Source: Macrostomum lignano
Lineage: Eukaryota
Length of the DNA: 64,000 nt
Assembly (NCBI GenBank): GCA_002269645.1
Contig: NIVC01002246.1
Span: forward strand, 232,745-296,744
Reading direction: 5' to 3'
Every line of letters begins with the position of its first letter. Position 1 is the stretch's first letter. The notes under the pieces are model-generated. The model did no database searches. It was not told the origin of the DNA and saw only the letters and a program-made list of their open reading frames with translations. The translations under genes were made by a program, and so were the position numbers. Positions 15,901-64,000 of this stretch are shown here, piece by piece.

Positions 15901-16102
15901 GGATTGCTCGTCTGCCTTAAATTTAGGGGTGCGATTTTGCCCCGCGAAGCCCCCGTTCGCACCGATTGGCTACTGAAGATTTCTTAGTTGTCTATGGTAA
16001 AAACGTTGTAAGCTGCAGTGCTCAGAGTGTGTAGTTATAATCACAGTCAGGTGCTAAGTTTTTACGAGGGGCACCCAAAAAGTTTTTGCAACTGGTCAAC
16101 TA

Positions 16103-17687: not shown

Positions 17688-17789
17688 TATTAAAAAAACA
17701 GTAACTGCAAAGAACAACTGAACATGTTACAATCCTTCAATGTAGGCTCCCCCTCTATCAATGCACTTTTGGTGCCGCCGAATCCATGC

Positions 17790-34781: not shown

Positions 34782-34859
34782 GAACCATTGTCCAGGTTGA
34801 TGAACCAACTCAGTGGGTGTCAAACGTCACCATTGTCACATAGATCAAGCCTACTGGCA

Positions 34860-35605: not shown

Positions 35606-37920
35606 GTACAATATCACCCAATCCCAACAGCTGAGGAGGTCCGCATGGCAACTGCTGGAGCCGCTGTATTTAGCACATTCGACGCAAAGGAGAGCTTTCA
35701 CCAGCTTAAGCTAGATGAGAAGAGTTTGTCTCTTACCACTTTCCACACTCCGTTTGGTCGATACAGGTGGAAGCGTGTGCCGTATGGCCTATCTTCGATC
35801 CCAGAAGTGTTTCAGAAACGCATGTAAGAAAATGTTACCAGCCATGTGGAAAACGCAAAAAACTTCTTCGATGATATTATTTTGTGGGGACGCACGATCG
35901 AGGAGCACAATACGGCGGTGCGCCAGCTAATGGAGCAGTGCAAGCGTGCAAACGTGACGCTGAATCCCAGCAAGGTGAAAGTTGGAGTCCCAGAGCTAAG
36001 CTATTCAGGGGACATTCTCGGACCTGATGGACTGAGGGCTGATCCCCAGAAGGTTAAAGCGATCAAAGAGATGGCAAGACCCGATTCTCTTGAAGGCGTG
36101 ACAGCAAAGAAAGAACAGCTGAGGCGGTTTCTTGGCTGCGTCACGTACTTGGCCAGATTCTGCCCACACTTGTCTGCCACTGCAGAGCCACTGAGACACC
36201 TGCTGAAGAAAGAGGTTATATGGAGCTGGGTGGATCAACACGACCAAGCTTGTGATGAGATCGTCGCGGAACTATGCTCAAGCCGAGTGTTAGCCACGTT
36301 TGACACCAACAAGCCTGTCACAGTCTCAGTTGATGCAAGCAAGAGCGGCATCGGCGCAGTGCTTCTTCGAGAGGATCGCCCCGTCGAATACGCGTCTTCG
36401 GCTATGACAAGTGCTCAGCGCGCGTACGCGCAGATTAAGAAGGAGCTTTTGGCCATCGTCTATGGTTGCAAAAAATTCCATCGTTATATCTGGGGTCGTA
36501 CGGTGCAAGTGCAAAGCGATCACAAGCCACTTGAATCGATCTTAAAAAAGGCTTTGTGCGTCACTACTCCTCGAATTCAGCGACTCCTGCTTCAGTTTCA
36601 GCCTTATGACATCCGCGTGAAGTACACGCCCGGCAAAGACCTTTATGTAGCCGACACTTTAAGTCGAGCTCACGGTGCAGCTGATCTTCTCACTATTCAG
36701 CTTGAGACTGCGCTTGACGGCCAAGTTTTATCGGTGGAACGCTGCTTTAGTGGTAATCGAGAAATCTTGCAGATGATGAAGACTGCGACAGCAGATGTGA
36801 CTAGTGAGCGTTTGCGAACTGTCATCCAGGAGGGTTGGCCAGAGCATCGGTCAAAGTTTTCAGATGATCTGAAGCCTTTTTGGGATATTCGAAATGACTT
36901 GACGTATGCCTCCGGTCTTCTATGCCTGAAGGACCGTATCTATGTCCCAAACGGCCACGCCCGGAAATCAGTGCTCAAAATTCTACATGCGGGGCACCCT
37001 GGCATCGTGAAAATGGACTTGAAGGCCAAGGACTATTTCTACTGGCCAGGAATGCAGAACTGCGTAGAGCAGGTCGTTAGTGAATGCGAGTCGTGCCAGT
37101 CGTGTCGCGCTGATGTCTGTGAATATGCCGGATTTTCCGTTCCAAGTCTGTTCGACTGACCTATTTGAGTTCACTGGTGGATCCTACTTGGTGTACGTTG
37201 ACTCCTACAGCTGCTGGATGAGGGTCACACGGATGAGATCAGCCACAAGCTTGGCTGTCGCGAGTGCGATACGGGATCATTTTCAAAGCTTTGGAGTGCC
37301 AGAGAAGCTAGTCAGTGATGGAGGCCCGCAGTTTTCTGCTCGCGAGTTTCGACAGACAATGGCTGAATTCGGAGCACCGAACCTCGAGTCCAACGTACCC
37401 GTAGTCGAACGGGAGAGCTGAGCGCTACGTACAGACAGCTAAAAACATGTTGAAGAAATGCTCCGAGACAGGCCAAAGTCTGGAGTTGTCACTGCTTCAC
37501 TACCGCAACACTCCGGTCGGCAGCGGCTTTCCAAGCCCGGCGGAGATGGCTTTCGGCCGTAAGCTTCGATGTGACCTGCCAGCGACTGTCAAGGACTTGC
37601 GGCCAAAGAAAATTCATCTTCACTCCTGCATTGAGCCTTTTGAAAAAGAGCGCATTAGAGCAGCGCAACTGTACAATCGCCGAGCTCGACCGTTGCAGAA
37701 GCTAGCAGCTGGTGATCTGGTGTGGTTACAACGCGGTCGTCGCGAGTGGGTGGCAGCTGAGATTGATAGTTCGAACCCAGTACGACCTTGGGGAGTTCTC
37801 GCATTCGCTGAGACTGGACAGTTGCTCAGACGGAACCGCCGCTTCATCAGGCCTCGGAAGATTGGTGTGACAGTCGGTGAATTCCAACAGAGCAGCGAAG
37901 AGGACGAGCAGGGAGATTGT

Positions 37921-38100
37921 CAGCCGGCCTCCGTGCAGCCGACCTCCATGCAGCCAGCCTCCATGCAGCCGGCCTCCATGCAGCTGGCCTCCGTGCAGCC
38001 GGCCTCCATGCAGCCGGCCTCCATGCAGCCGGCCTCCATGCAGCTGGCCTCCGTGCAGCCGGCCTCCATGCAGCCGGCCTCCATGCAGCCAGCCGCCGTG
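37921..38100 (+). repeat. 15-bp in-frame repeat (QPASM/QPASV, ~12 units) in the Gypsy A integrase tail
   Basis: CAGCCGGCCTCCATG units. Confidence 0.95.
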
Positions 38101-38786
38101 CAGCGAGATGGGCCTTATCGGACTATGCGTGGCCGAGCTGTCAAGACTCCTGAGTATTACCAGGCAGCCTAAGTACTGTAAGCTGCTGGTGACTGTCACT
38201 TGATGTAGTACTTATTCTTGAGCTAACTTAAACTTTTTAAGCATCTAAAAAATCAGCTTGCAGCATTCGGCCATAACATTGTAATACTTTCTGTATTCCT
38301 CTAATATCTCGGATTGCATGACTTACTAACCTTATAACAAATATGATTTTTGTTTTTATCCTGCTCATACAGTATCTGTTCAATATTTCGTTTTTCATAC
38401 CTTTCTCAGAGATATAAGTTCGCACCAATGCTATTTTATTTCGATCGTTTTCGAATAAATAACTTTCGTAAGGGAGATGTTGTGCATTGCATTGGGCCGT
38501 ATGAATAAAAAAAAGAAATTTTTTTCTTGCAAGAAATCCAAGAATTTCTTGCGTTTATAAGAATAAAAAACTGCGAGTTTCTTGCAAGATTTTTCGCCAA
38601 GAAAATCTCGAGCTTTCACAAGAAAAGATTTGCTCGGCAAGAAAATCTCACGAGGAAAAGATTTTCTTGCTTTCTGATGAATAAAAGACGTGATTTTCTC
38701 GCCGAGAGAGCCGACACTTGAGTTTTATGCGAGCAACTCTTCTCTGGCTCAAGCGAATCTTCAGCGCCCATAACACGAGACACGAG

Positions 38787-39593
38787 ATGTTCCTTCAGAT
38801 CAGAAAGACCAAGGAGTACCTGCCCCGACAGGCCACTCCAGTGGAGACATATAGACAGCTTCATCGATTCACTGAGGATCACGTGACCTTTCTGACAACG
38901 CGCTTCCTAGGACATACTTCCGAGACAAGGGGCGGTGCGCTGACACCGAAACAGAAGATGGAGATCACGCTGCGGTACCTGAGCAACCCTGGCTTTCAAT
39001 CCGGTGTTGCCAAGGAGACAGATGTTCATCAAAGCACGGTGTCAAATGTTGTTTGGGACGTCCTGCAGAGTATCGCGCGGCTGTCTCACGAATGGATTCA
39101 ATTTCCACAGGAAGGTGCTTCAGCGAACCGTGCTAAGGCACAGTTCACTGAAGCAATGGGCTTCCCGTCGGCCATCGGGGCAATTGACTGCACGCATGTG
39201 AGGATCGAAAAGCCCTCAGGAGCAGCCGGTGACGAGTACATCAACCGGAAGGGGTTTCCCTCCATCAATGTTCAGGCAACGTGCTCCGAGAAGTGCGTGT
39301 TCACTAGTTTGGATGCGAGTTGGCCTGGCTCGGTGCACGACAGTAGAGTGCTCAAGAACTCGGCGCTGTACGCGTGAGTACCTCGTATTCATACTTAGAA
39401 TCTGATTCCAAGTGGGCAAATGGTAAACTTTATATATTTTACGTAGCAAGTTAAACACTTTCCAGTCATCTACTCACGACCAGAGTCAATTCTGGAGTGC
39501 TCCTCGGTGACTCTGGGTACGGAATCGAACCGTTCCTAATGACGCCGTATCCGCAACCCGAAACGGAGCAGCAGTTTGAAAAAACAAGCAGTC
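38787..39593 (+). pseudogene. Harbinger-2 transposase (spliced; exons 38787-39373 and 39484-39593; C-terminus apparently missing)
   Basis: GAIDCTHV, NRKGFPSINVQ and WPGSVHDSRV; a GT-AG intron 39374-39483 joins to VLLGDSGY in frame. Confidence 0.85.
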
Positions 39594-45400: not shown

Positions 45401-46233
45401 AGCAACAACAGCCACAACAACAGCAGATAGAGTAGAGCAGAGTTGCAGAGTTGTTAAATTGAAATATTAATTTTTCTCTTGATAGTTACAGTGATGTGTA
45501 AAACAGTTGCGCACTGAAGATAAAATAGAAATTTAGACGGAGCGCTGAGTCGGAGAAGGCTACGACTATTTTCAGCTGGTAAAGGGGAGCTTTGCAGCAG
45601 TCAATATCGAATTTTGAGGGCTTGCGTGCTTGTGCGCTTGCGACAATGATGACATGATGATGACAATAATGATTTTCATTAACTTGTTCAATGTAAGAAA
45701 ATTTCAGGTGACTATGTAGAAATTTGCGGGCTCTATGTAAGGGATAGGCTGGGTGTTGGAGCCGAGCAGAATGTCGATGGTAGAAGTCTGTCTCTGATTC
45801 GCTGATGGATCAAAAGTTGCGCCATAGACAAAGTTTAGGAAAGAGAGGGACAAGGAAGGTTTTATTTAGTTTTTTTATGAGAGGAACGCAAGAATTTAAT
45901 GTTCTGTTTTGAAAGCCGTCTAATTAGGAGACTAATTAACACTCTATGAGCGATTCGCTTTTTGAGAATGTTGAACTTGGCGAATCTGCCGGATCAAATG
46001 GTATCCAGATTATCAATGGAGGAGCTGCATTTTGTGACGTCCGAATCTGCAACTAGTATAAATATCTGGAGGCTTTGAGTGGCAAGTTTGCTCGAAGACT
46101 GGTGAAGTAGAATTGAACTTTCAATTTAAGCGGTGTTAATGGTAAGCATTAATGTTTCGAAAGTGAACGTCTGTTTAACGGAACGAACTGAACTTTAAAA
46201 CTGATCATTTACGTCATTGTTATTATTAACGTA

Positions 46234-47169
46234 TTGCTTTTGTCGTGCTTTGTGTAACAGTGGGCATGCAAAACGGAACGGCCCATAGAATTCTATAGCC
46301 AAGTGTTTGAATTAACCCGGTGAAAGCAAGCCATAGACAACTCGATTTGTTATGTAATATGGAACGATGACCCGGAATAGAAGGAACGGTTTGAGTTTTA
46401 TTTACAGAAAGAACAGAAACAGACATTAATGAAGCACATTTTAAGTCACAAATTGAAACCATCAAATATAAAAAGGTCAACTCTTCGTTAGCGTATTCGC
46501 TTCTGGCGTCGAGGCTTTCGACTCGGTTGGTGTTTTGGCGCACATCCGTCCTCTTGGTAGCAAGTTTGATCGTAGAGAGCAAACCATTCATTGCTCGATC
46601 AATTGTTTTAAGGCTCATATGCGGCTTGTCAGGAAGGCTTCCAACCAGCTTCTCAACCATTGAATTTAGCGTTAGAAAGGGATTTTGCTCCACCTCTTGT
46701 TGTAAAAAAATGCATCTCTGCGTCAATTTTGCAGCTTTCTTCTTTGCGGCCTCCACGAGGCAAAGCTTCCAATCTGCCGGCTTGTTCGAATGTTGACCAA
46801 ATGCGGTGAACGGAAGTTTCGGATACTTCTAACAAAACTGAAACATCCGTCATCGACAGTCCACGATGCAAGGCGGCTATGATACGCTGTCGATCGCGTA
46901 CAGAAATTTGTGGTGCCATCTATACGAACGTAACTTAGCTCGACGAATCGTTAGAAAATAAAAGCGTCTTGTCTCGCTGTGAAAAGCTCAAATCGTTCCT
47001 TCTATTTTGGCTCACGTTTCCTTCTATTTTGGCTCACCGTTCCATATTGCATGACAAATTAAGTTGTCTATGGCTTGCTGTCTCGTGTTGATTCAAGTGC
47101 TTGACCTTAGAACCCTATAAGCCGTTCCGTTTTGGATGTCCCCAGTTCCACATAGCATGACAAAAGCAA
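46234..47169 (-). mobile_element. Internally deleted Tc1/IS630-like element related to 16103-17687
   Basis: Diverged ~140-bp TIRs starting TTGCTTTTGTC; TA TSD; a frameshifted N-terminal remnant (RGGRKEESCKIDAE...NPFLTL...LPDKP) aligns to the 16412-17491 protein. Confidence 0.8.
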
Positions 47170-47464
47170 TACTATACTATTGTCGCTACTGCCGAGTCGT
47201 TGCTGTTTGAAAAAAAATATACTTGCTTGTTACAGTGCTTGGTGCTGAGCTGACCAAAAATTGGGTGCTACCATAGACTATGGAAACTTTGAAACAAAAT
47301 TTTATTACTTTTCACCCTGAAAAGGGACACTGACACTTAAGCCCAGAAAAGTTCATGACAATGGATAAATAATCAGCGGTCCCAGTGCGTGACAACAATT
47401 GTCTGGCGAGCGCCGGTGCATGACCGCTGGGAGGATCCAACTAGCCATTGAAAGCTGCGATCAG

Positions 47465-49787
47465 GGGTCTGTGCTACCGAATACTCTTTCCCCTAAATCC
47501 TTAACAGTGTCCTAACTCCTAGCTCCTAGATAGTTTTCTGTGCTATAGAATCAAGAGTAAATTTTAAGAGCTAAGAGGCTCCTTAATGACGTAGGAGACT
47601 CCTTGGTGAATTTATGAAACGTCATTAAGGTTTGTCGTGTGCATGCTATAGAATAAAGAGCGGGGAGGATTTGCCGTTAAGGAGTGAGATTCCTAACTCT
47701 TCTAACTCCTAGATAAGATTTCAAGGGCCAAATTTTAATCTTAGGTTCGTAGGAGTTTCCTTTGTTATGTTTTCGGACAGTTACCTGGGCTCGGACGATG
47801 AGGGAGCTAACGATCGGCGACCCAGGCAATTTAAGCAATTAAGAATAAACTTTTTCAAAGAATTTCCTACTGTGTCACGGGTTCGGCTCAATGAAAATCA
47901 ACGTCAATTTAAAAAAACAATGCTGCATCTTAAAACATCACAAATTGTCCTAGATGTCGACACGTATTATTAACATTGTCTGTGCCGAAAACGGGCACTG
48001 TTTTGCTGGGAACAATAAAGACCAATTTTATGGTCTCTAATAGCACCCTTGTTATTCATTTATTATGAATATTAGAGCAAATGAGAGCAATTAATTGCGA
48101 TAGCAGTGAAACCTTTTTCTATTGAATTAGTCTATCAACTTATTAAATGCGCTCTCTTTCTCCAATTAAATCGCAGGCTTGTAGCCTAAAATGGTTTTAT
48201 TGCTTTACGCGCTCGTAGCCGCTTTTCAAGCGGGTAATAAAACTTGCTGTTGAATTACTCCGAGAATTACTCCTTAAAGTGCATACATTTTGGAGTATAA
48301 TATAGGTACCTCTTATTTCGCCGATTCTCGTTTCGCCGACATTCTCGTTTCGCCGAATTTCGTTAGCTTACAAGCATTACGAGCGTAATTTTAACTCCGC
48401 TCGGACCTAACACGAACAGTAAGAAGTCGAATAACAGACCACAGAAGCAGACATTTTAACAATAAACTTTAAAATGTTAATATCACTACGAGTTCAGTTC
48501 AGTTGAAACTTAGACAACCGCGTCGTGCAAAGTGTAGCTGCAAGCATTCCCGTAGTCCCGTAGATTTATTTTGCCGTTGAGAAACTGCCCTCTGAAGGTC
48601 GCTAGAGCATTCGCTAGTTGCCAGGTTCGGAGCCTCGGCTGCGGTGGTACAGTCCCGGCTCGCTGCTCAATGCACGTCTCTGCATTGACAATTTCAACTC
48701 GCAACTTCTTTACGAATTCGTGGACATTGAGTCGGTGGTTGCGACTTATCGAATTTAGCGCATGGTGTCGGCTCTCCGCGGCATTGATAGTTCTGTCTGC
48801 ATCTTCATTAAAATGGTTTCACATTTTTCGGTTATAGAGAGCGTTTGGCTGTGACCAAGTGTTCAGGAAGTAGCCCAACAACGCATGGCAGTTTTTATGA
48901 GCAGCATACCCGGGTTCAGGCATGTCGGTGGGTGAACTGGCCATCGTCCTGATATGGCTGCAATACTGGCAAGCTCAAAATCGGCCAAGAAGTGGTTGCA
49001 CATTGGATAGTGGCCAGTCAGTTGTCTGCAGGCATCATGCAAGTAGTGCCACATTGCCTCGTGGGTGACTTGCTGCTTTTTGGGCATCTCAAATATATTC
49101 GAAACACAGTTGAAGGTACCGTCAATTTGATGGCGATCAGTTTCTGCGAGTTCGCGGATCAGCTGGTTCGATGATAACCCAACGATGCGCTTCGGTGTGC
49201 CTCCATTGATATCGAAAACTCGCAGAGTCTGTTGAGTCTACGGATCAACGATATAATCAGCTCGAGTGGCCGGAAGAGGGAGCAAGTTTTTGTGCCAAAC
49301 ACGGTATGCTGCATCCTTGATACTACCGAATGTCGGCAATGTCGCTGGATTTGCTTAAAAGGCATCCATAGCAATGGCCTGCCGGTATACTTGAGTCATT
49401 TGAGCGTTGTTGTTGGTGCACTCATTCTTGGTATGCTGCAAAAACTGCAGACATCTAAATCACATTTGCATTAGTGTAGTTGTCTATGGTCTAATGTCCA
49501 GATGGTTATGAAATTAATTTCGGCGAAACGAGAATCGGCGAAATGAGAATGTAGGCGAAACGAGAATCGCAAAATTAGATTCAGCCAAACGAGAATCGAC
49601 AAAATGACAAAAATCGACAGATTGACAGACTCCTTAGCGAATCACCTTACACTCCTTAGAACTCCTCACTCCTATCCTTGGAACAACTCCTTGCTCCTAA
49701 CTCTTGATTCTTGAACTCTATAGCACAAAAAATCGATTCACTCCTTGCTAGGAGCCCTCCTGACTCCTAACTTCTCACTCTTTGCTC
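47465..49787. mobile_element. Stack of non-autonomous elements with (C)TGTGCTATAG-type ends and CTCCTA/TAGGAG subterminal repeats (Harbinger-MITE-like)
   Basis: TGTGCTATAGAATCAAGAG at ~47538 versus its inverse at ~49700-49730; a similar end CTATGGCACGGGCC resumes at ~58629. Boundaries uncertain. Confidence 0.4.
48305..49620 (-). mobile_element. MULE (Mutator-like) transposon remnant
   Basis: IDGTF, PKKQQVTH...FLADFELASIAAI...WP and RTINAAESRHHALN motifs; inverted clusters of TTCTCGTTTCGCCGA repeats at both ends. Confidence 0.7.
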
Positions 49788-50962
49788 TTAACAGTAGAAA
49801 GACCACGCTATTTTCTCCATGGGGAAAGACCATGGGGGTGTAGTAGAAATACACACAACCAATTTCACCATAGCTCGCAAACCAAATAACCGATTTTCGT
49901 AAAAGTCCACCATTTAGATCAAAATCCCCCCCCTCTTTAACGAATTAACTTTCAACGTCATCCGACGTCAGCATCATCGAGATATTTAACGATTCTTGTC
50001 GAAGACACTGGTGGCAAGGACAACAAACACTACACTGTATAAACCTTTATGGTGAATCCATATTGGCTCAATAATCTGGCTCCATCTGTCGGAGAGGCCT
50101 TTCTTCTCAGCATCCCAGGAACCAGGGTCCCCTTCATCACCGTCTGGAGCATCGGCGGCGACCGTCTGGACCTTCAACAAAAGCACCCGATCGGCATCGC
50201 AGAGACGGCTGCGTCCCCAAAACTGAAATGGAAGAATCCTCTTCTGCATGCAGCATTCAGTCAGTAGGCATAATCGGTGATTGAAATGGACGATGGCGAC
50301 CCTCTAGGTTGACCTGTAGACATACAAGCGACCTTCGGGACCTTCAACGGAGTGCCACCAGGCGGCCCCGACTAGCTGGCACCCCCAACATCGTGATTTT
50401 TCTGTCAAGGCACCAAACCAGGCATGTCTGCATGTTATACAATGCTTTTGCACCGTGTTAAATTGGAGAGTTACATATTTAACTGGCGACTGAAAAATAT
50501 AAAATATATTTAATTTGTCAAAAATTATATTACAGCATGTCAAAAATGATATTACAGCATGTCAAAAATGATACGCCTGGGTAGAGGCAACTTTGCAACG
50601 GTGAAGTTATCTACTTAAATCAATTATAGCAAATCACCGAGTCATGTTCTTCGAAGCTTCCGAATGACCAGGCGAATGAACTGTTCAGCCGTGATGTTCT
50701 CGTGGACCGCAGGTGGGGCTGAATCCACAACCTCTCCACCGGTAACACTTTGCAAGTAGCGCTTGATTTCTTCTGGGTAGTTAAACTGCAAAGACTGAAG
50801 AACTGAAGATGTGCTGGTTTTTGTAACAGTGCAATCTCTCGCCTCGTTGTGTTCCCCTTTATTCTAGGCGGTTATTCTTTCTTGATTCCCGAGCCTGAGG
50901 GCTTCGCGATGGCTGCTCTGAAAGTTCTGTAATTACTTATATATAGTGCCTACAAAGGTATG

Positions 50963-53900
50963 TGATGTGTATTCGCAAGACGGCTCGTTCCGTCTAATCG
51001 TATATTTGTGTTTACAAAAAGGAGCGGAAATAATTCGTTATCGTAGGAGCCCTTGTCTCGCTCCGCTCGTTCGTTACTTAATTCCATTTTCCCTAGTGCG
51101 CCCAGCTCTTTAGTAACTTTATGGGTCTTCGACAATTATGACCATAGATAGTTCAATCATATGCGTAAAAAGTTCACAGTTAAAATCCATATCAACTTCC
51201 GCCCTCCTTAAATAGTGCACTCTCCACTTGATTGTTCATACTTCCTCAATCAGTCGCTTAGGTGACATTCCTTTGTTTTGTCTTTTAGACCGACACACAT
51301 GCTGTTGATGTTTGCGCGCTCCACTTGACTGTATCTCGACTGGATCTATCGCTTGTTGTCTGAATGGTACCAAGTTGCGCGCAGTCCAAACCTTTCCATT
51401 GTCCAATCGGTATTTGAAGTTGCCAACCACTTTGATGACTTTGAATGGAGAGGTGAAAGGGGACCTGCCCTTTGGCACATGAGGCAAACGAACACGTACC
51501 AGATCACCGACCTTGAAGTGTCGCTTGAATACTTGGTGCGGTTCCTGTTTTAATGTGGTCACTAGCTCGTTCTATGTTTCATTGGCCTTGGTTGTTCTGC
51601 GAGGTTGGAAATTTGCTCTTTTGTCGCGGCCAAATAGCAGTTTTGCGGGTGTCTCCGTTCTCATTCGGCGTTGTTCGGTAGCTGAATATAGTCTGTTGTA
51701 TGCCTTCTTCGAAACTCTTCCGCTCAACCTCGAAGGTTTGTGCCGCATGCTTCAGCGTTCGATTGAAGACTTCCACCTTGCCGTTTCGTCTTGGCTCATA
51801 CAGTGGGACACATTCGTGACGGATATCTCGTGAAGCGAGAAAGTCCTCCATTTCTCTGGAGACAAAGTTGTTTCCGTTGTCAGATACCAGGGTATCAGGA
51901 TTGCCGAAGCAATTGAAAACCTCTGTCAGCCAGTGGATTAGTCTTGGTGATCTCGTGTCTCCAGTGAGAAGGATCTCGGGATATGACGAATAGTAATCGA
52001 TGAGCGCGACAATGAATCGTTGATTTTGTAGAGCGATTGCAAACGGCCCGGTGATGTCAATCGCGAGCTTTGACCAGAGTCGGTCAGGCTTTTCAACCGG
52101 TCCACCGTTTGGCACGATAATTTTGTGCGACTGAGCACTGCACTGGCATGGTAGACAGAACTTGACATAGTTCGTTATGGCGCTATCCATACCTGGCCAT
52201 CAGTATGCCGATCGCAGAAGTCGTTTCATTCGTACGTTCCCGGGTGTCCTTCATGGGCACGCTTCAGGATTGTCCTGACTAGGCTGCTGGGCGGCACGAT
52301 TTGTTCACCACGGATCAGGATTCCGTTTTCTATCGTCAGTTCGTCTTGAATCTGTGCAAAGGACTTGAGCTCTGTCTTCTTTTTATCAATTATTCGGGAG
52401 CTTTTGACAGCCTTCATAACCTCCTGTAGTATGGTATCTGTGCTCGTTAGCTTCTGCAGGTTTCTTGCAGAAGGGGTGTCAATATCGTTTGCAAGCAGAA
52501 TGCTGCGGATAGTAGCATCGTCTTCGTTATCCGCACTGTCCAGTCCATCGACGACTGGTAGTCTGAATAGGGCGTCAGCCACGTAGTTGGTGCTTCCGGG
52601 CTTGTAGACTATGTCGTAGTCAAATTCGGACAGCCGAACCAACCAACGTGTGAATTTTGCTGACTTCGTCTTGTTACTATGGTGTCGTAGGAGGCTCGTT
52701 AGTGCAGAATGATCTGTTTGTAAAGTGAAATGTCGTCCCAGCAAATATTTTTCAAAGTGTTCACATGCCCAGACGCAGGCAAGTGCTTCGCGCTCGTTCA
52801 CAGCGTAGTTTTGTTCCCGCTCGGAAAGTGCATGGGATGCAGATGCTATTGGAACCTCTGTTTCGGCTTGCGTTTGTGAAAAAACAGCACCGATGCCGAC
52901 ATCTAAAGCGTCGGTTGTCAAGATCGTGGGCAGGTTAGGATCGAAAATGGCCAGTTCCAGTCGTTCCTTAAGTATTCGCCTTACGCGGTCAAAGGCCGAT
53001 TGTTGCTCGCTTCCCCAGATAAACTTTTGGTTCTGTCGTGTTACGCGTCTCAGCGGCTCAGTGATCGTCGCTAGGTCTCTCACAAAGTTTGAGTGATAGT
53101 CAATCATGCCTAAGAAAGACCGTAGCTCTGTCTGGTTTTTTGGTGCCGGTGTGTTCTTGATCGCCGAGAGCTTATCGGGGTCTGACTCGATTCGTCCTTT
53201 CTCATTTATAATGTAGCCCAAAAACGGTACGCTCTCGCGGCGAAACATAGACTTCGTGGTGTTGATGCAAAAGTCCTTTTCGTGAAGTAGTTTGAGGTCT
53301 TTGCGGAGCTCATCGTCGTGCTTCTTGATCGTTTGTCCAAACACCAGGATATCGTCGATATATGCTATTGTTTGTTCGCAGTCGCCGAGTGTGCTGCTTA
53401 CACATCGTTGAAAAACAGACGCGGAGTCCACCAGACCCATCGGTAGTCGATTGTAGGCATACAGCCCAATTGGTGTCGTTGTTGTTGTCAATAGTTTGCT
53501 CTCTTCGTCGAGTTTGATGTGAAAGTACGCTCGCTTTAGGTCGATCTTTGATTTGTAACAAGCCCCATTCAACTTCATGAAGAGTTCGCTGATGTTCGGT
53601 ATAGGGTGTCGGTCTGGGATTACGAATTTGTTCAGATACGAAAAGTCCGTTGTTATCCGGATGCCACCGTCTGCTTTCCACACAGTGACGAGTGCATTGG
53701 CCCATGAACTTTTCTCAACAGGACTCCAGATCCTCATTTCCTCCATCTTCTTGATCTCACTGATTGCAGCCTCACGACGAGCCAGCGGAATGGTCCGCGT
53801 GGGAATATACTTTGGGGTAGCGTCCTTTTGAAGAGTTATGTTATGCGTGTAGTCTGGATAGGTACCCAGTGATTCCTCTGATAGTTGAGGGAACTCGTCT

Positions 53901-55435
53901 ACAATGTCACAACTTTGTCCGGCATTGGTTGAAATTTGCATCGAAGCTCCGTCGAACTTCAGTCCCAGAACTTTTATCAGGTCCATTCCGACGATAGACT
54001 CTAGACTGTTCTTCGTGACAAATAGTCTGGCGTTGTTTGTTCGATTTAAAATGCCTATCTCTGCCGTGATGTGGCCAATTATGTCCGATATCGCACTGTT
54101 GTCGTAGTTTCGTAGTGTCAGTGTAGCTGGGTGGATTTCCTTATCTGGCCAGATGCGCTTCAAGTCTGCATGTCGAAGAGTCGAAACTTCAGCAGCCGTG
54201 TCCAGCAATGCCGCGTAAGTTCCGTTCCTGCCGACAGCTGTAACCTCAACCGATGGTGTTTCACTCTGGCCAACTGATCGAACGTGCCTTTTGATTGCGC
54301 GTACTTTCTTTACGGTGTTGGCCCTTCGTTGTGATATTATGCAATGGGAGGCAAAATGGTTTGGGTTGCCGCATCCTTTGCACAGCTTTCCGAGGGCCGG
54401 ACATTTAGCATCTTTGTAGGCATGTGAATTTGAACCGCAGCCCATACATTGCTGTTTCTTGTTCCCCTTGTTCTGGTTGCTGCAGGGATCGCCGAGGCCG
54501 TGCTTTTGCGCTGGTCGGACTTCGCAGATGTGCGCTTGTGTACTTGTTGAATTGGCGCCATTGCATTGCTCCTGATGATTTCGCCAGTAAGTGACGCAGA
54601 ATCATCAGCTCGCATGGTGGTCAGAAAAGACTGCAGGTCAATAGTGTGTTGGGTCAACAGTTTCTCCTGTGTGCTTTTAGACGCACATCCAATCACCAGT
54701 TGCATTGCAAGCTGCCTATCTTCTCCAGCGCCGTACTCACAGTCCGTAATTAGTGTTCGCAGGGCTGTGAAATAGTCACTGATGGACTCACCGTGCTCCT
54801 GCTTTCGCTTGCGGAATTCGTACTCTGCACGGACTGGGTTTTGGCTTTTGCTGAATATTAACTTCAGCTTGCCCATATATTCTTCCAGGCTGCTAGCCTT
54901 ATCGTCCTGGAGGTTGTGCGCGTACAGGATACGTCTTCCTTCTGAGCCCAGGGACGTGCGCAGGAATGCCTTTTTGAAGTCATCTGTTAGTAGTGCCCGG
55001 TCGTAGTCTCAGTGAGGAAAAAGAAGTCGGTGACTTCCTTCTGCCAGATAGTCCACTTGACTGGTGGTTCGCCTGGTAGCTCCAGAAATTTTGATGGTTG
55101 TGGTATCGACACACGAATATTCTGGGCATTTGTAGCTGCTGCCGCTGATGTCGGTTTCGAGGCGATGTTGGTGGGGCCATGGGTTGTTAGTCCTCGTCGT
55201 CAATTGATGTGTATTCGCAAGACGGCTCGTTCCGTCTAATCGTATATTTGTGTTAACAAAAAGGAGCGGAAATAATTCGTTATCGTAGGAGCCCTTGTCC
55301 CGCTCCGCTCGTTCGTTAGTTAATTCCATTTTCCCTAGTGCGCCCAGCTCTTTAGTAACTGTCTGGGTCTTCGAGAATGATGACCATAGATAGTTCAATC
55401 GCATGCGTAAAAGTTCACAGTTAAAATCCATATCA
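50963..55435 (-). mobile_element. Gypsy-type LTR retrotransposon D, structurally complete (4473 bp) with frameshifts
   Basis: LTRs 50963-51194 and 55205-55435 (TG...CA, about 10 substitutions plus one indel); TSD GTATG; PBS-like TTGACGACGAGG; PPT AAGGAGGGCGGAAG; gag 54337-55180, PR LDTAAE, RT YIDDI, RNase H and integrase to 51236. Confidence 0.95.
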
Positions 55436-56075
55436 GTATGTACTGATTTCACCGTGGGACGCACACGCATGCTTTTATGGCGGGATTATATGTATGTTCC
55501 ACCGCTGGTAACGACGAATAATCTATTGAAGCTTGGAAATTTCATCCCTCCTGCTGAGTTTACTGTATCTGGAGCGGGGGGCAACTGTTACTAGGGGTTT
55601 AGCCACAGGCGGACGGTCACTGGAGGGGGTGGGGGGTTACTAAGAATATTAAACTCACGACTCTCAATCCTGATTTGCTAGATTACCCCTGCAGGTATAC
55701 CATCACTTCGTCTTAACTTCCATTCTGTCGCACGTGTCCGCTGGACCCATTAATTTAAATAATTTAATCTTTCTGATACTATTCAGCTTAGCTTTGCTAA
55801 ATCTCTCGCACCTGCCGGAAACTGTTGCTGCTTGGATAAATTTCTTATAAGTTCTGTTTCTCGTCCAAACTCGCAACACATCCATCCAGTAGAATCAAAT
55901 TCTCCTGCTTTTGAATAGCAGAGGCTCTTGCTGACAGCGATTTGGATGAAGAGTTTTCTCCGGATAAGAGTGGTCCAGATGAAATAAAAATCTGTTCGAC
56001 ATTTCTCATGACCCAATCAACTGGTCCCAAGTCCCCCCACATCCAAGACGATGGGCTAGTGACTGTGTTCCTCGG

Positions 56076-57671
56076 TTGACAGACGAACTGAATCCACGCA
56101 TTAATTGGAAGGAGTGCGCTGAAACGGAGAGCGGCACACTGATGGGCTTCTTCGATGACCCCATGCTGGATTTGATCACAGCTGCAACGAATGAGAACAT
56201 CAGCTCAACAAGTGGAGACTCAGCTGAGCTAGCAAGCAGAATGGAGATTGAGGGGCTAATCGGTGCTCTACTGTACAGCGGAGCCAACGATCTGCGCAAT
56301 GTCGCCCTGATAGACTTGTGGAGCACTGATGTGAATTCTGGCTATCATCCACTGCTGCAGTGTGCGTTCAGCCGAAATCGATTTCAACTACTTTGGCGCA
56401 ACCTGTGCTTCGAAACTGCCGAACATCGTCAGCGGACTGCCGCAACAGACAAGCTCTACGGCATCCGACGCTTGTGGGACACCTTTGTCAGTCAGCTTCG
56501 CCATCCTGTCCTTCCCGGGCCGTACCTCTGCGTCGACAAAACTCTGATTGTCTACTGGGGTATGGACTGTGACTTCACGGTCTTTCTGAGGGAGAAGCCC
56601 GGTCGCAATGGTGCCAAGCTGTTCCTGCTGACATCGGCTGGGAATCCAGAGATTCAGGATGACATGGACATCCGCTATGTGTTCAATGCGGAAATCTGCA
56701 CTGGCAAAGGAACACTGCTGTCCACTACTTTTGCATCACAGGAATCCGATGCTCGGCTAGCCAAGGGCTCAGAGGTGTGGAGTGGTGAGCAAGTTGTTTG
56801 CCGCTTGGCTGATACATTCAGAGGACACTGGTACCGCATCACATGTGACAGATTCTTCTCGAGTCCTGCTCTGGCCAATCACTTGTACCGAGAAATGGGA
56901 TTCACGTTTTTTGGAACAGTGATGCGCACCCGTGGTGGCCTGCCAGCCGATCTCAAGATTTCAGCTCAAACCATGGCTCCACACACGAGCGAATTCCGGT
57001 TTTCTGAGGAGCTCACGTGTGTGTCCTACTGCCCCAAAGCGCGCCGAAACGTGATGTTGCTGTCCACCATGCATCACTACAGACAATTGCTTCCCAATGG
57101 CAAGCCTGTAGCAATAGACTCGTACTACAATTCTACCAGGAGTGGCACGGACACCTGCAACAGGTTGTTCCGCACATCCGACTACAAGCGAAAGTCCGAC
57201 ACATGCGAGAAGGCAATCTTATCCGGCGGCACACTCAACATAGCAATTGTGAATGCCGCTGCTATCTGGAGACTGGCGCACCCGGAGCTCTGCGCCTCGC
57301 CGAACTATCGCAACGAGTTCCAGCGCAAGGCAGCTGCGCAACTTCTGCAACCTCTGATCGAGGAGCGCTCGCAATCGGCCGCTCTTCTTCAAAATCTGTC
57401 CAATCATCACAGGCTGATGTTCCAGCTCGCAGGTTGTCGAATCAACGACGAGCAAATGAAGGAACAGGCACGCGAAGCGGCGGCTGTGGTGTCAGTTGGT
57501 GGCAGAAAGTGCTGTGCAACATGTGTGAGACAAAAGTCAAAGGATGAGAAGCGTGCCTTGAGTGCGACAACAAGGAAGTGTTGCATGTGTGACGAAGGAA
57601 TTTGCCGAAGACACACTGCAATGGAAGAGACAGTGAGTCACCATTACTGCCCACGTTGTGCACCAAATTAA
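56076..57671 (+). CDS. piggyBac transposase (531-codon open frame; acidic N-terminus frameshifted upstream)
   Basis: LCVDKTL, ITCDRFFSS and SGTDTCNRL catalytic-D motifs plus a C-terminal Cys-rich domain; candidate own 5' end TTAA|CTTCC...GTCCGCTGGACCC at 55713-55748; no matching 3' TIR found. Confidence 0.85.
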   Translation: MTDELNPRINWKECAETESGTLMGFFDDPMLDLITAATNENISSTSGDSAELASRMEIEGLIGALLYSGANDLRNVALIDLWSTDVNSGYHPLLQCAFSRNRFQLLWRNLCFETAEHRQRTAATDKLYGIRRLWDTFVSQLRHPVLPGPYLCVDKTLIVYWGMDCDFTVFLREKPGRNGAKLFLLTSAGNPEIQDDMDIRYVFNAEICTGKGTLLSTTFASQESDARLAKGSEVWSGEQVVCRLADTFRGHWYRITCDRFFSSPALANHLYREMGFTFFGTVMRTRGGLPADLKISAQTMAPHTSEFRFSEELTCVSYCPKARRNVMLLSTMHHYRQLLPNGKPVAIDSYYNSTRSGTDTCNRLFRTSDYKRKSDTCEKAILSGGTLNIAIVNAAAIWRLAHPELCASPNYRNEFQRKAAAQLLQPLIEERSQSAALLQNLSNHHRLMFQLAGCRINDEQMKEQAREAAAVVSVGGRKCCATCVRQKSKDEKRALSATTRKCCMCDEGICRRHTAMEETVSHHYCPRCAPN

Positions 57672-57734
57672 ATAGTGACAATTGACTCAGCCTTTGTGTC
57701 TATGTGTCAGTGTTCAGATCCTTCTGCTTTGAAT

Positions 57735-57905
57735 TTGCTGTAATATCATTTTTGACATGCCGTAATATCATTTTTGGCATGCTGTAATATCATTTTTGAC
57801 ATGCTGTAGTATCCTTTTTGATATGCTGTAATATCATTTTTGACATGCTGTAATAGCATTTTTGACATGCTGTAATATCATTTTTGACATGCTGTAATAT
57901 AATTT
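57735..57905. repeat. 22-bp minisatellite (GACATGCTGTAATATCATTTTT); 2-3 inverse copies at 50520-50573
   Basis: About 8 tandem units. Confidence 0.93.
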
Positions 57906-60220
57906 TTGACAAATTAAATATATTTTATATTTTTCAGTCGCCAGTTAAATATGTAACTCTCCAATTTAACACGGTGCAAAAGCATTGTATAACATGCAGA
58001 CATGCCTGGTTTGGTGCCTTGACAGAAAAATCACGATGTTGGGGGTGCCAGCTAGTCGGGGCCGCCTGGTGGCACTCCGTTGAAGGTCCCGAAGGTCGCT
58101 TGTATGTCTACAGGTCAACCTAGAGGGTCGCCATCGTCCATTTCATTCACCGATTATGTCTGCTAACTGAATGCTGCATGCAGAAGAGGATTCTTCCATT
58201 TCAGTTTTGGGGACGCAGCCGTCTCTGCGATGCCGATCGGGTGCTTTTGTTGAAGGTCCAGACGGTCGCCGCCGATGCTCCAGACAGTGATGAAGGGGAC
58301 CCTGGTTCCTGGGATGCTGAGAAGAAAGGCCTTTACGACTGATATGCATAGTTTTCTGAGCCGACGTGGTTTCATGATGAGATTTTGTGAACAGAAAAAA
58401 TTTGCCAATGTTGGTAGTTTTTGCCACCGGACACCCCGAGCAGAATCGTTGAATATCTCGACGATGCCGATTTTTCGTGATTCTCGGAGTTGCTTCATCG
58501 AATAGAGCGGAAAATTTTAGCATGTGTTCTGGATTTCGATGGCAATTGGTTGAATATTTTCGGAGATTCAGACAAAAGAAAAATATGTGTATTTGAAATA
58601 CACCCCCATGGTCTTTCTACTGTTAAATCTATGGCACGGGCCCCAGCCCGTTTCACAACATGAGCATGAGATAAGTTTCGGCGCGTCAGAAAAAAACAGC
58701 TTAGCAAAACTCTCGAAGAACGATCACTGTATCACACCGCGCACTCGTGTCATTACAAACTGTGAATTCGGTGCTGGCACTAACAGGCGAATCACCATGT
58801 AGCTGGTTATCGGATCGCAAATTTGCAACAGCTGTCCCTGTGTGGTAGTCAACGGCATAGCAGCAGATTTTCAGCGTCAGATTTGTGCTCTTGGATAGAT
58901 AGATAGATGAATAGATAGATATTAATAAATGCAATTCGACTTGAAGCGACGTACAACCAGTAGGAGTTAGATTTATTCTGAAGAGATGTCGGATATATTT
59001 GACGATAAATGAATGTAACTTTATTTAATGAGTATTTTGCAGACTGAACACGTAACGGCTCCGTAGCCTATTTATGCGACTTAGAAAAATACCAATCATA
59101 GTAACTTCAAACTGAGCTTGCAATACTAGCTACCTAATATTTTATGCAAATTAAAGTAATTATTAGACTCAAACGGATCAAGCCGATGTTACTTAATATT
59201 CAAGACATTAGAATACAACTAGGCGGTATCCCCACCCTCCGGGTGTCCGATCTACCCATCTCCCATCCAGTAGAATTCCTCGCGGAGTACTGTATAGTTA
59301 CAGTAGATTGGAAGCTAAAAAGTTAACATCTTGTATTCACAGATTGAGGCTATTACTTAACAGTTCCGAACCTGTTCAATAGCTAAACTCTAATTGTCTA
59401 TACAAGATGTTAACATACCATACCGATCAATTAACTCAAAGTGGGTGTGGCGGCTCCCTCAGTCAATGGAAGACTATTCATCTATACACAGCCCTCAGAC
59501 GCATTGTGCACTGCACACAGAAAGCTACGACTGTGCCAATGGCTGTAACTCTGGCCGCTTGCTGCAGGCCAGGTGTAATGAGTAAAAAATAATATATAAG
59601 AAAGTTTTTATGAGCGCTGATCTTATGATATGGCGTTTTTATTAGTACGGGAAAGAACGATGGAGGCGAAATGCTATTTATAGGATTTTTATAGCGTTTA
59701 TTAATATATACGTTGATATGGCCGTCGTTGGATTTGTGAGTGGGGAAAGGGGCGATAGAATATAGATGAGCTATATTTATATTATGAGCTTTTTTTATAT
59801 TTTATATTATATTATATTATTATATTATTTATTTATATTATATTATTTTTATATTATTATATTATGAGCTATAGATGAGCTTCTAGTTTTTAGTGAAGTG
59901 ATGATGATGACGGGTAGGTTACTGCAAAATATTGTACTGATTACTTAAGTAATCAGTTCACTAAATGTATGTTGTATGTATTGTGTATATGTCTATATGT
60001 TGATAATGTATTTTAGTAATAGTATTTTAGTTCTCTGCTCTTTTATTTCATCTAAATTTTCAGCACCAGCACCAGCAGAAGCAGCAAAAAATTGAGCCTC
60101 TTCGAACAGACCATGCTAGGCAAATAGTTAAAGATGGATAAACTCAATGGTCAGAGACCAAACCATAGACATAGTCCATTGCCTCCTCGCTGTGGCCGGA
60201 TGCGCCGCGGATGACAGAGG

Positions 60221-62926: not shown

Positions 62927-64000
62927 AAGAACAACAACAACAACAAGGTACTGCTCCCGCCGGCCACGCAGTAGCCAGAAAGGGGGGAGCAGTCAGAAAG
63001 CGCGTCTCTGGGCCATTGCCCTCAGGAAGTCGCATCCCCTGCTTGGTCGGGGCGCCAGCGTCACTCAGAAGTCAGTCAGGGTATCGCACCGTTCGCCCTT
63101 GGCCTCGCCTCCGCGGTCCCTGCAGCTTGAGCAGCAGCACGTCGTGTAGCGGCTCAGGACAGCGGGCCTCCGGATGACATGGCCAGCCAGTCGAAGTCGC
63201 CGCCCGCGCAGCAGGTCAGAAGGCCGCGTCAGGCACGCCCTAGTGTAGAGCGCGGCATTGGTCTCGCTGCCTGGGCCGCTGCGCACTACGAAAGCCGCAC
63301 GCAGCATTGCCGCATGCGCAGCGTCCAGCTGCCTCTCCAAGGCGTATGTCAGGGTCCAAGTCTCGGCGTTGTACAACAGGACAGTCTCGACGACTGTCTG
63401 AAACAGCCGAGCCTTGAGCCCGTCGTCCTGGGCCTCAGATTGGAGCACGGAGCGCACAGATCGAAATGCGGCCCAGGCCAGTCCTCGTCGTCTCTTCAGG
63501 TCGTCGGCAACGTCCGGCACGGAACCGCCGAGGTACACAAAGCGCTCGCAGCGGGTAAGCATAAATGCATTCCCGGCAGCGTCTCGGTAATTGATCTCGA
63601 CCGGCAAGTCGGAGGGCACCGTGAACACCACCGTCTTCCGCGCGTTCAGCTTAAGGCCGACCCGCGACGCTGCCGCCGTCAGGCCATCAAGCAGCCGCTG
63701 GGCACCTTCAGCCGTCGATGAAAGTAGCGCGAGGTCGTCCGCGTAGCCGAGAACGGAGAGCCGCTTCTCCGGGTGCCGCCGACTCGTGCGTCTTCTCAAA
63801 AGGAAGCCGTCATCCAGGTTGGGCAGCCGGTTCTCAGCACCCAGTCCAGTGCCAGCACAAACGAAAAGGCGCCAAAGTGTCACCCTGCAGCACGCCTGAC
63901 GACGTGCTGAATTGGTCTGACAGTCCATCTGGCGTCATCACCGAAGCGGTCGTGTCCTGGTACATCGCCATGATGGCGGAAATCAGTTTCTCCTTCAATG
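62927..64000 (-). mobile_element. Non-LTR retrotransposon (RTE-like) 3' end; continues beyond the window
   Basis: RT YADD motif, VETVLLYNAETWTL and RRLRLAGHVIR; ends in a (TTG)n tail at ~62930-62946. Confidence 0.88.

What the first reader, a model, noticed from the sequence alone, without database searches (positions are those of the whole stretch)
49788..58626. 8.8-kb TTAA-flanked element with ~780-bp inverted arms whose identity increases inward
Seen: both ends read TTAA-CAGTAGAAAGACCA(...)TGGGGGTGTA..AAATACAC; the left end carries a ~27-bp insert or duplication. About 130 bp of unrelated sequence follows, then ~120 bp of loosely similar sequence (49970-50093 vs 58333-58470). Next come ~480 bp (50094-50573 vs ~57850-58332) in which I spotted only about 5 differences, ending in a 22-bp minisatellite. 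Between the arms lie a complete Gypsy and a piggyBac transposase with its own apparent 5' end but no 3' TIR. Removing the unit rejoins ...GCTC-TTAA-ATCTATGGCACGGGCC, a plausible MITE end. Known: TTAA targeting is typical of piggyBac and Kolobok, but a CAGTAG terminus and arms this long fit neither well. Inference: an unclassified foldback-type, cargo-carrying transposon with inner arms homogenised by conversion, or an inverted duplication that replaced the piggyBac 3' end.
Basis: partly seen in the sequence, partly recalled or inferred. Interest (0 to 1): 0.7.

Follow-up and report, generated by a model that had tools for sequence, protein, structure and literature searches.

The report
Long-armed piggyBac-like transposon with nested Gypsy
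The 8.8-kb unit is one degenerate copy of a very divergent piggyBac-family DNA transposon with unusually long inverted end regions and a Gypsy retrotransposon inserted inside it, so it is a known kind of mobile element and not a new class.

Summary
TTAA plus a perfect 14-bp terminus (CAGTAGAAAGACCA) occurs at 49788 and 58626 and nowhere else in the window. The left end has 27 extra bp. About 110 bp do not align, about 130 bp are weakly but significantly similar, and 475 bp differ at only 5 positions. That stretch ends in a 22-bp minisatellite.

The interpretation needs correcting. The termini are of the piggyBac type:
- TTAA duplication and a 14-bp TIR that shares TAGAAAGA at positions 4-11 with T. 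ni piggyBac.
- A 5-7-5 palindrome at element bp 20-36 on one end and 47-63 on the other. piggyBac has its transposase-binding palindrome at LE17-33 and RE45-61.

The only transposase (55912-57671, +) is a piggyBac DDE_Tnp_1_7 protein with the DDD triad and a C-terminal Cys-rich domain. It has no separate 5' end. The "cargo" is that gene plus a nested, coding-degenerate Gypsy (50963-55435, TSD GTATG).

piggyBac-like elements with TIRs of 200-528 bp are already published. The arms stay in register along their whole ~780 bp, so the 99% inner block is best explained by recent homology-guided conversion.

No other copy could be found in any accessible collection. Mobility, family-wide architecture and the empty site remain untested.

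The parts
49788..49791 (.). Left TTAA (target-site duplication)
49792..49805 (+). Left 14-bp TIR, CAGTAGAAAGACCA
   Evidence: It is a perfect inverted match to 58609-58622. It shares TAGAAAGA at positions 4-11 with the T. ni piggyBac tip CCCTAGAAAGATAGTC (PMC5861402).
49806..49832 (+). 27 bp present only at the left end: 12 unique bp (CGCTATTTTCTC) plus a 15-bp duplication (CATGGGG+AAAGACCA)
   Evidence: It makes the two ends asymmetric, as an insertion plus a duplication does in piggyBac RE63 versus LE35 (PMC7351741).
49838..49854 (.). Left subterminal 5-7-5 palindrome GTGTA-N7-TACAC (element bp 47-63); inferred binding site for the Cys-rich domain
   Evidence: There are only two occurrences in the window. 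The binding role is inferred by analogy with piggyBac RE45-61 (PMC5861402).
49856..49965 (.). Left outer arm segment that does not align with the right arm, although its length is conserved (110 versus ~113 bp)
49966..50095 (.). Left arm segment weakly similar (~55-75%) to 58332-58470. It contains the conserved motifs CGAGATATT, AACGATTCT and GGTGGCAA.
50096..50570 (.). Left inner arm: 470/475 identical to the reverse complement of 57857-58331
50516..50573 (.). 22-bp minisatellite, 2.6 copies, at the inner edge of the left arm
50574..50962 (+). Unique 5' non-coding region of the transposon, first part. It ends in the Gypsy TSD copy GTATG (50958-50962).
   Evidence: No repeats in the window and no Pfam hit. 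The TSD is shown.
50963..55435 (-). Nested Ty3/Gypsy LTR retrotransposon. The LTRs are 50963-51194 and 55205-55435 (TG...CA; 9 mismatches plus 1 indel in ~231 bp). RT/RNaseH is at 52226-54445 and the integrase core at 51579-52190. The coding region is in at least 4 pieces.
55436..55911 (+). Gypsy TSD copy GTATG (55436-55440) followed by the second part of the unique 5' non-coding region
55912..57671 (+). piggyBac-type transposase gene. It has ATA where a relative has ATG, and one frameshift at about 55985-55995. The frame is then free of stops from about 55989 to the stop at 57671.
   Evidence: - Pfam DDE_Tnp_1_7, E 2.4e-44.
- PDB 6x67 (T. ni piggyBac), E 2.8e-31, with D268, D346 and D447 aligned to D.
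- C-terminal Cys/His pattern.
- N-terminal lesions.
57736..57911 (.). 22-bp minisatellite, 8 copies, at the inner edge of the right arm, 64 bp after the transposase stop
57857..58331 (.). Right inner arm (99% partner of 50096-50570)
58332..58470 (.). Right arm segment weakly similar to 49966-50095
58587..58603 (.). Right subterminal palindrome GTGTATTTCAAATACAC (element bp 20-36)
58609..58622 (-). Right 14-bp TIR
58623..58626 (.). Right TTAA (target-site duplication)

Best explanation
The unit 49792-58622 is a single copy of a piggyBac-like element (PBLE). It is about 4.35 kb without the nested Gypsy.

Inferred mechanism, by analogy with T. ni piggyBac and not tested here: the element inserted by cut-and-paste at a TTAA. 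Its transposase would recognise the 14-bp TIRs through the catalytic and DNA-binding core. Its C-terminal Cys-rich domain would recognise the GTGTA-N7-TACAC palindromes. These lie 19 bp from one tip and 46 bp from the other, so the 27-bp 'insert' is the family's built-in left/right asymmetry and not damage.

The element belongs to the long-TIR/STIR type of PBLE. Its two end regions are homologous in inverted orientation over about 780 bp.

Later events:
- A Gypsy retrotransposon inserted into the 5' non-coding region (TSD GTATG).
- The transposase lost its ATG and acquired one frameshift.
- The inner 475 bp of one arm were overwritten by the other arm through homology-guided repair (intra-element gene conversion or template switching). 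This left a sharp 99%/~60% boundary.

My confidence is about 0.9 that it is one PBLE and about 0.55 that the 99% block arose by conversion.
For: Shown:
- TTAA plus a perfect 14-bp TIR, unique to the two ends.
- A single transposase, DDE_Tnp_1_7 at E 2.4e-44.
- It matches the T. ni piggyBac structure 6x67 at E 2.8e-31, with all three catalytic Asp conserved.
- A Cys-rich C-terminus.
- The right arm starts 64 bp after the stop codon, and no alternative end exists inside.
- The 5-7-5 palindromes lie at bp 20-36 and 47-63. In piggyBac they lie at LE17-33 and RE45-61 and are bound by the Cys-rich domain (PMC5861402). That asymmetry is needed for activity in cells and is built from an insertion plus a duplication (PMC7351741).
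- The two ends are of different types and their outer ~110 bp do not align, as expected for the left and right ends of one element.
- Three motifs keep a constant 24-bp offset between the arms, and one gapped alignment runs from 49968 to 50573. The arms are therefore collinear throughout.
- The inner arms (5/475 differences) are less diverged than the Gypsy LTRs (9/227 aligned positions plus an indel; Fisher p = 0.017). The homogenisation therefore postdates the Gypsy insertion.

From the literature:
- PBLE TIRs average 14+-2 bp, and imperfect STIRs reach 400 bp (PMC5381638).
- Long TIRs of 200-528 bp and elements up to 9.5 kb are reported (PMC10140906, PMC10813416).
Against: - Only one copy is available, so mobility, an empty site and a family-wide architecture are not shown.
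- TTAA on both sides does not discriminate, because every piggyBac end sits next to TTAA.
- Position 3 of the TIR (G) lies outside the published motif C[C/A/T][C/A/T] (PMC5381638).
- The short-spacer end is 3' of the transposase gene here but 5' in T. ni piggyBac.
- Conversion between arms that are only about 60-70% identical nearby would be inefficient, unless the inner block had been kept similar continuously.
- Binding of the palindrome by the Cys-rich domain is inferred only from geometry.
Confidence: 0.72

Rival explanations
1. Local inverted duplication without pre-existing homology, or an assembly artefact. A replication or repair error (template switch at the minisatellite) copied 475 bp of the 3' region into the 5' region of an otherwise ordinary short-TIR piggyBac-like element. 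Alternatively, the assembler created the inverted copy.
For: - The identity boundaries are very sharp at both edges, and the inner edge lies inside a minisatellite.
- The block is younger than the nested Gypsy.
- Four of the five differences cluster within 20 bp.
Against: - The block lies in register with an older, significantly similar 130-bp stretch. It sits at the same distance from three conserved motifs in both arms (113 versus 124 bp from the first motif; constant 24-bp offset). By my own rough estimate, a homology-independent insertion would land like this about 1% of the time.
- The five real differences argue against a pure assembly duplicate.
Confidence: 0.13
2. Two independent insertions. 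Two related piggyBac-like copies landed tail-to-tail at neighbouring TTAA sites and lost their inner parts. The 8.8-kb unit never moved as one element.
For: - A TTAA flank is obligatory for any piggyBac end, so it does not prove a single event.
- No empty site or second copy could be retrieved.
Against: - Under this model both arms would be the same (3') end type. Instead they differ in palindrome spacing (bp 20-36 versus 47-63), and 110 bp do not align. This matches complementary left and right ends.
- Uniform divergence along the arms would be expected, not ~50%, then ~65%, then 99%.
- There is only one transposase remnant and no deletion scar or second internal end.
Confidence: 0.1
3. One reading: a new, unclassified foldback-type transposon that uses TTAA targets and carries a Gypsy and a piggyBac remnant as cargo.
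For: The arms are long, with a minisatellite at their inner edges. The arms exceed the longest piggyBac TIRs I found in the literature (528 bp; PMC10813416).
Against: - The arms are unique sequence and not tandem sub-repeats.
- The tip, TSD and subterminal palindrome geometry are those of piggyBac.
- The enclosed transposase is the matching enzyme and abuts the right arm.
- The Gypsy has its own 5-bp TSD, so it arrived by itself.
Confidence: 0.03

Closest known systems
Trichoplusia ni piggyBac (IFP2); structures 6x67 and 6x68
   Same: - TTAA duplication.
- A 13-14-bp TIR with TAGAAAGA at positions 4-11.
- A 17-bp 5-7-5 palindrome close to one tip and about 45 bp from the other, with asymmetry built from an insertion plus a duplication.
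- A DDD transposase with a C-terminal Cys-rich domain (PMC5861402, PMC7351741).
   Different: - The tip is CAG, not CCC.
- The palindrome arms are GTGTA/TACAC, not TGCGT/ACGCA.
- The short-spacer end is 3' of the gene.
- The transposase aligns to the T. ni protein over two stretches only (E 2.8e-31), and D450 is N.
- The end regions are about 780 bp long and inverted-homologous, where piggyBac needs 35 and 63 bp.
Long-TIR/STIR piggyBac-like elements: structural group SG2 of Bouallegue et al. 2017; bee PBLEs with 200-493-bp TIRs; the Crassostrea virginica PBLE with a 528-bp TIR
   Same: - TTAA TSD.
- A short conserved tip followed by long imperfect inverted repeats.
- Element sizes up to 8.5-9.5 kb.
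- Non-CCC tips such as CAC/CACTA (PMC5381638, PMC10140906, PMC10813416).
   Different: - The arms here (about 770-780 bp) are longer than the longest I found reported.
- Identity is lowest just inside the tips and 99% in the inner 475 bp.
- G at tip position 3.
P0001 (580-aa transposase on Logan contig SRR31628394_512287), the nearest relative among 1.84 billion representatives
   Same: - 41% identity over nearly the full length.
- The same N at the D450 position.
- A similar Cys-rich C-terminus and an acidic N-terminus beginning MAAALIEDSD, against (I)AEALADSD here.
- Long non-coding flanks (>633 bp 5', >1250 bp 3') with no end within the contig.
   Different: Its ends are not on the contig, so the TIR and arm architecture cannot be compared. 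No long inverted repeat is visible within its 3.6 kb.
Drosophila Foldback elements, and Galileo (a P-superfamily element with TIRs up to ~1.2 kb). This comparison rests on my own knowledge.
   Same: Long inverted arms. Galileo is a precedent for a 'foldback-like' element that turned out to belong to a classical cut-and-paste superfamily.
   Different: Foldback arms are built of tandem sub-repeats and make 9-bp TSDs. Galileo makes 7-bp TSDs and encodes a P-type transposase. Neither fits TTAA plus DDE_Tnp_1_7.

Membership tests
piggyBac superfamily (piggyBac-like element, PBLE) | TTAA target-site duplication at both ends | tested here: met
   TTAA lies at 49788-49791 and 58623-58626, directly abutting the TIRs.
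piggyBac superfamily (PBLE) | Short TIR (about 12-19 bp) starting with C, with first six bases C[C/A/T][C/A/T][T/G/A][T/A/G][T/G/A] (PMC5381638) | tested here: met
   The TIR is a perfect 14 bp. CAGTAG fits 5 of the 6 positions; position 3 (G) is outside the motif. It is one base from the CACTA tip common in bee PBLEs (PMC10140906).
piggyBac superfamily (PBLE) | Encodes a DDE_Tnp_1_7 transposase with the D268/D346/D447 triad | tested here: met
   Pfam PF13843, E 2.4e-44. In the alignment to 6x67, all three Asp align to Asp.
piggyBac superfamily (PBLE) | C-terminal cysteine-rich (cross-brace zinc-finger) domain | tested here: inconclusive
   A Cys/His pattern CC-x2-C ... CC-x-C ... C-x2-H ... 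C-x2-C is present and aligns with the pattern in P0001. No profile or structure match to the domain was obtained.
piggyBac superfamily (PBLE) | Multiple copies, precise empty sites, evidence of transposition | not testable with these tools
   The source genome is not in any searchable collection. Two metagenome scans, one viral scan, five exact-protein look-ups of window ORFs and two protein searches found no other copy.
T. ni piggyBac-type end architecture | Asymmetric ends: a palindromic internal repeat near one tip and about 28 bp further in at the other | tested here: met
   GTGTA-N7-TACAC lies at bp 20-36 (right end) and 47-63 (left end). In piggyBac it lies at LE17-33 and RE45-61 (PMC5861402). 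Protein binding was not tested.
Foldback (FB) elements | Arms composed of tandem sub-repeats up to the termini; 9-bp TSD | tested here: not met
   The arms are unique sequence, apart from a 22-bp minisatellite at the inner edge. The TSD is TTAA.
Kolobok | TTAA TSD together with a Kolobok-type (THAP-containing) transposase | tested here: not met
   The TTAA TSD is present, but the only transposase is DDE_Tnp_1_7. No other Pfam hit occurs in the element outside the Gypsy.
Ty3/Gypsy LTR retrotransposon (the nested insert) | Two LTRs (TG...CA), a short TSD, and pol order RT-RNaseH-integrase | tested here: met
   - LTRs of 232 and 231 bp.
- TSD GTATG.
- RVT_1, RT_RNaseH and rve in that order on the minus strand.
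- The coding region is split into at least 4 ORFs.

The most novel reading that the evidence does not exclude
The long arms might be a family-wide, actively maintained feature: a piggyBac lineage whose ~780-bp inverted end regions evolve in concert through recurrent intra-element gene conversion. Such an arrangement could also flip the central segment by crossover, which would explain why the short-spacer end lies 3' of the gene. If transcribed through, it could yield hairpin RNA that feeds small-RNA silencing of the family. This would be a piggyBac/foldback hybrid architecture from a transposase clade represented by only one other sequence (41% identity) among about 15 billion proteins.
Probability: 0.12. 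Interest if true: 0.5.

Novelty: new member of a known kind. Interest (0 to 1): 0.22.

Why it matters
The main value is as an annotation correction. A structure that looks like a new foldback-type, cargo-carrying transposon is a nested pair of ordinary elements.

Three points have modest specialist interest:
1. The transposase belongs to an almost unsampled piggyBac clade. Its nearest relative is 41% identical.
2. Its ends reproduce the asymmetric palindrome geometry of T. ni piggyBac with a different recognition sequence. This gives a natural second example for testing how the Cys-rich domain and end asymmetry co-evolve.
3. The arms are longer than the longest piggyBac TIRs I found in the literature. 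They also show an identity profile that points to intra-element conversion.

Tried and rejected
- Other copies of the element. I searched for the exact 28-mer terminus and a 52-mer of the inner arm in metagenome contigs, and a 20-mer terminus in viral contigs. I ran exact-product look-ups for two start variants of the transposase, two arm ORFs and a neighbouring Tc1/mariner ORF. All were empty, so the source genome is not in these collections.
- Word-index protein search with the transposase: nothing at E<=1e-20. The same search with its nearest relative P0001 returned only P0001 itself.
- The P0001 contig (L001). I looked for TTAA-flanked TIR pairs, the palindrome and the TAGAAAGA core. None was found, so its ends lie beyond the 3.6-kb contig.
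- An internal 5' end for the transposase. No interior TTAA is followed by 8 or more of 14 matches to the TIR, and no meaningful partner for such a site was found 3' of the gene; the one 9-of-13 pair (55750 with 59151) is A/T-rich and its partner lies outside the element.
- Coding or RNA function for the arms and the unique 5' region. There were no Pfam hits even at E<=10 apart from one chance-level match, no Rfam family and no tRNA.
- A MITE partner for the right flank, or any second copy of either flank, in the window: none.
- A literature search for the terminus sequence returned only unrelated primers. The supplement listing PBLE TIRs is not held.
- The nested Gypsy was handled piecewise, using ORF coordinates, LTR ends and Pfam scans only. 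Its full sequence was never printed or fetched from elsewhere.

Full report
**Observation.**
The pattern TTAA+CAGTAGAAAGACCA is found only at 49788-49805 (+) and 58609-58626 (-) in the 64-kb window, even with three mismatches allowed. The chance expectation is 0.06. The adjacent AAGACCATGGGGGTGTA is likewise found only twice.

I aligned the left arm globally with the reverse complement of the right arm and tested segments against shuffles.
- The tips match, apart from 27 extra bp on the left (49806-49832).
- About 110 bp are no more similar than shuffled sequence (score 18 versus 15.6+-2.4).
- About 130 bp (49966-50095 versus 58332-58470) are weakly but significantly similar (score 49 versus 15.4+-2.2; 0 of 500 shuffles).
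- At 50096/58331 identity jumps abruptly to 470/475. The differences are at 50141, 50262, 50265, 50268 and 50281.
- The identical block ends inside a 22-bp minisatellite with 2.6 copies on the left and 8 on the right.
- No further copy of the arms, the flanks or the unique interior exists in the window.

**What lies between the arms.**
On the minus strand there is an LTR retrotransposon at 50963-55435.
- Its LTRs are 232 and 231 bp, run TG...CA, and differ by 9 mismatches and one indel.
- It is flanked by a 5-bp duplication, GTATG.
- It encodes RT, RNase H and an integrase core in Gypsy order, but in at least four separate ORFs.
- It is therefore a self-inserted, coding-degenerate Gypsy and not cargo.

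On the plus strand, 56076-57671 is a 531-codon ORF.
- It matches Pfam DDE_Tnp_1_7 at E 2.4e-44 and the T. ni piggyBac transposase structure 6x67 at E 2.8e-31.
- The catalytic D268, D346 and D447 all align to Asp. D450 is Asn.
- The C-terminus carries a Cys/His pattern typical of the piggyBac Cys-rich domain.
- Comparison with the nearest relative shows that the stop-free frame extends back to about 55989.
- The acidic N-terminus continues in another frame back to about 55912. There ATA stands in place of the relative's ATG (MAAALIEDSD versus IAEALADSD).
- The gene is therefore nearly intact, with two N-terminal lesions.

No interior TTAA is followed by anything resembling the TIR or pairing with a 3' partner. 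The right arm begins 64 bp after the stop codon.

**The termini are of the piggyBac type.**
- The 14-bp TIR has the average PBLE length (14+-2 bp). It fits five of the six positions of the published tip motif (PMC5381638).
- It shares TAGAAAGA at positions 4-11 with the T. ni tip CCCTAGAAAGATAGTC (the sequence is quoted in PMC5861402).
- It is one base from the CACTA tip reported as the commonest in bee elements (PMC10140906).
- Each end carries a 17-bp palindrome, GTGTA-N7-TACAC, which occurs nowhere else in the window. It lies at element bp 20-36 on the right end and 47-63 on the left.
- In T. ni piggyBac the corresponding 5-7-5 palindrome (TGCGT-N7-ACGCA) is the binding site of the Cys-rich domain and lies at LE17-33 and RE45-61 (PMC5861402).
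- In piggyBac the longer end differs from the shorter by an insertion plus a sequence duplication, and this asymmetry is required for transposition in cells (PMC7351741).
- Here the 27 extra bp consist of 12 unique bp plus a 15-bp duplication of tip sequence.

I therefore read the 'insert' as the family's normal left/right asymmetry. This is an inference from geometry, and binding was not tested. One difference stands: the short-spacer end is 3' of the gene here and 5' in T. ni.

**The arms.**
Three conserved motifs (CGAGATATT, AACGATTCT, GGTGGCAA) lie at bp 187, 197 and 219 of the left arm and bp 163, 173 and 195 of the right arm. The offset is a constant 24 bp, close to the 27-bp tip difference. 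A single gapped alignment runs from 49968 to 50573.

The two end regions are therefore collinear over their whole ~780 bp, including across the stretch that no longer aligns. That makes them old, long, imperfect inverted repeats. This is the architecture called TIR+STIR (group SG2, up to 400 bp) by Bouallegue et al. (PMC5381638). It has been reported as 'long TIRs' of 200-493 bp in bees (PMC10140906) and 528 bp in an oyster element (PMC10813416). The same papers report element sizes up to 8.5-9.5 kb. The arms here are longer than those figures but of the same kind.

**The 99% block.**
- It abuts the old diverged homology in register. A homology-independent duplication would land this way only about 1% of the time, by my own rough estimate from a ~1.5-kb target and two orientations. 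A homology-guided event (gene conversion or template switching during repair) is therefore the better explanation.
- The block is significantly less diverged than the LTRs of the Gypsy that sits between the arms (1.05% versus 3.9%; Fisher p = 0.017). The event therefore postdates the Gypsy insertion, or conversion is recurrent.
- Four of the five differences cluster within 20 bp, which would suit a patchy conversion tract.
- I cannot tell from one copy whether this is local or family-wide.

**Rivals.**
- *Homology-independent inverted duplication or assembly artefact.* It fits the sharp edges and the minisatellite junction. It does not fit the collinearity, and the artefact version does not fit the five differences.
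- *Two independent tail-to-tail insertions.* This cannot be excluded by the TTAA flanks, because every piggyBac end has one. It predicts two ends of the same type and uniform divergence. Instead the ends are complementary types and identity runs ~50%, ~65%, 99%.
- *A new foldback-type cargo carrier.* This is contradicted by the piggyBac tip, TSD, palindrome geometry and cognate transposase, by the Gypsy's own TSD, and by arms that are not tandem sub-repeats.

**Relatives and limits.**
- A full HMMER scan of 1.84 billion representatives found 3088 piggyBac-type proteins, but only one close relative. P0001 is 41% identical at E 3e-93, and the next best are at most 34% identical.
- P0001 sits alone in its cluster, on a 3.6-kb Logan contig whose ends lie outside the contig.
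- No DNA or exact-protein search found another copy of the element.
- Copy number, empty site, family-wide architecture, long-read support and small RNAs are therefore all untested.
- The arms and the unique 5' region gave no Pfam, Rfam or tRNA signal.

**Verdict.**
The element is a new, very divergent member of the known long-TIR class of piggyBac-like elements. It carries a nested Gypsy, and the inner arms were probably recently converted. Interest is low to moderate.

Noticed in passing
window 22780-25400: A 24-bp-period satellite array of roughly 100 or more copies at about 90-96% identity. It generates long spurious ORFs on both strands (22657-25401 and others).
   Followed up: no
window 16101-17689: A Tc1/mariner-type element. 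It has 108-nt inverted repeats (97% complementary) at 16101-16208 and 17582-17689. They flank a 279-aa ORF with HTH and DDE_3 domains (16652-17491, minus). A second related ORF lies at 17869-18792. A wider inverted pair lies at 15883-15963 and 21082-21162.
   Followed up: partly
window 46224-47179: A foldback/MITE-like structure. Its two arms of about 160 nt (77-86% complementary) are separated by about 630 bp and overlap a 176-aa ORF.
   Followed up: no
window 49511-49610 and 48311-48364: Just left of the insertion site there is a 15/32-bp tandem motif (GGCGAAACGAGAATC...). An inverted copy lies about 1.15 kb upstream, possibly the subterminal repeats of an older DNA transposon. The 200 bp next to the TTAA are a low-complexity ACTCCTT-rich stretch.
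   Followed up: partly
window 32629-39377 and 25446-26345, 63065-63928: Further retrotransposon fragments are present: RT_RNaseH, Integrase_H2C2, gag and RVT_1. There is also a PIF/Harbinger-type DDE_Tnp_4 fragment (38718-39377). The whole window is a dense nest of transposons with no evident host gene.
   Followed up: partly
window 50158-50178 / 50328-50348 (and mirror 58079-58099 / 58249-58269): Each inner arm contains a 21-bp direct repeat (GCGACCNTCNGGACCTTCAAC, 90% identical) spaced 170 bp apart. Its significance is unknown.
   Followed up: no
L001 (Logan SRR31628394 contig, 3624 bp): This is the only close relative of the transposase. It has an intact 580-aa ORF with more than 633 bp of non-coding DNA upstream and more than 1250 bp downstream. 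This suggests an intact, possibly active member of the same unsampled piggyBac clade in another organism.
   Followed up: partly
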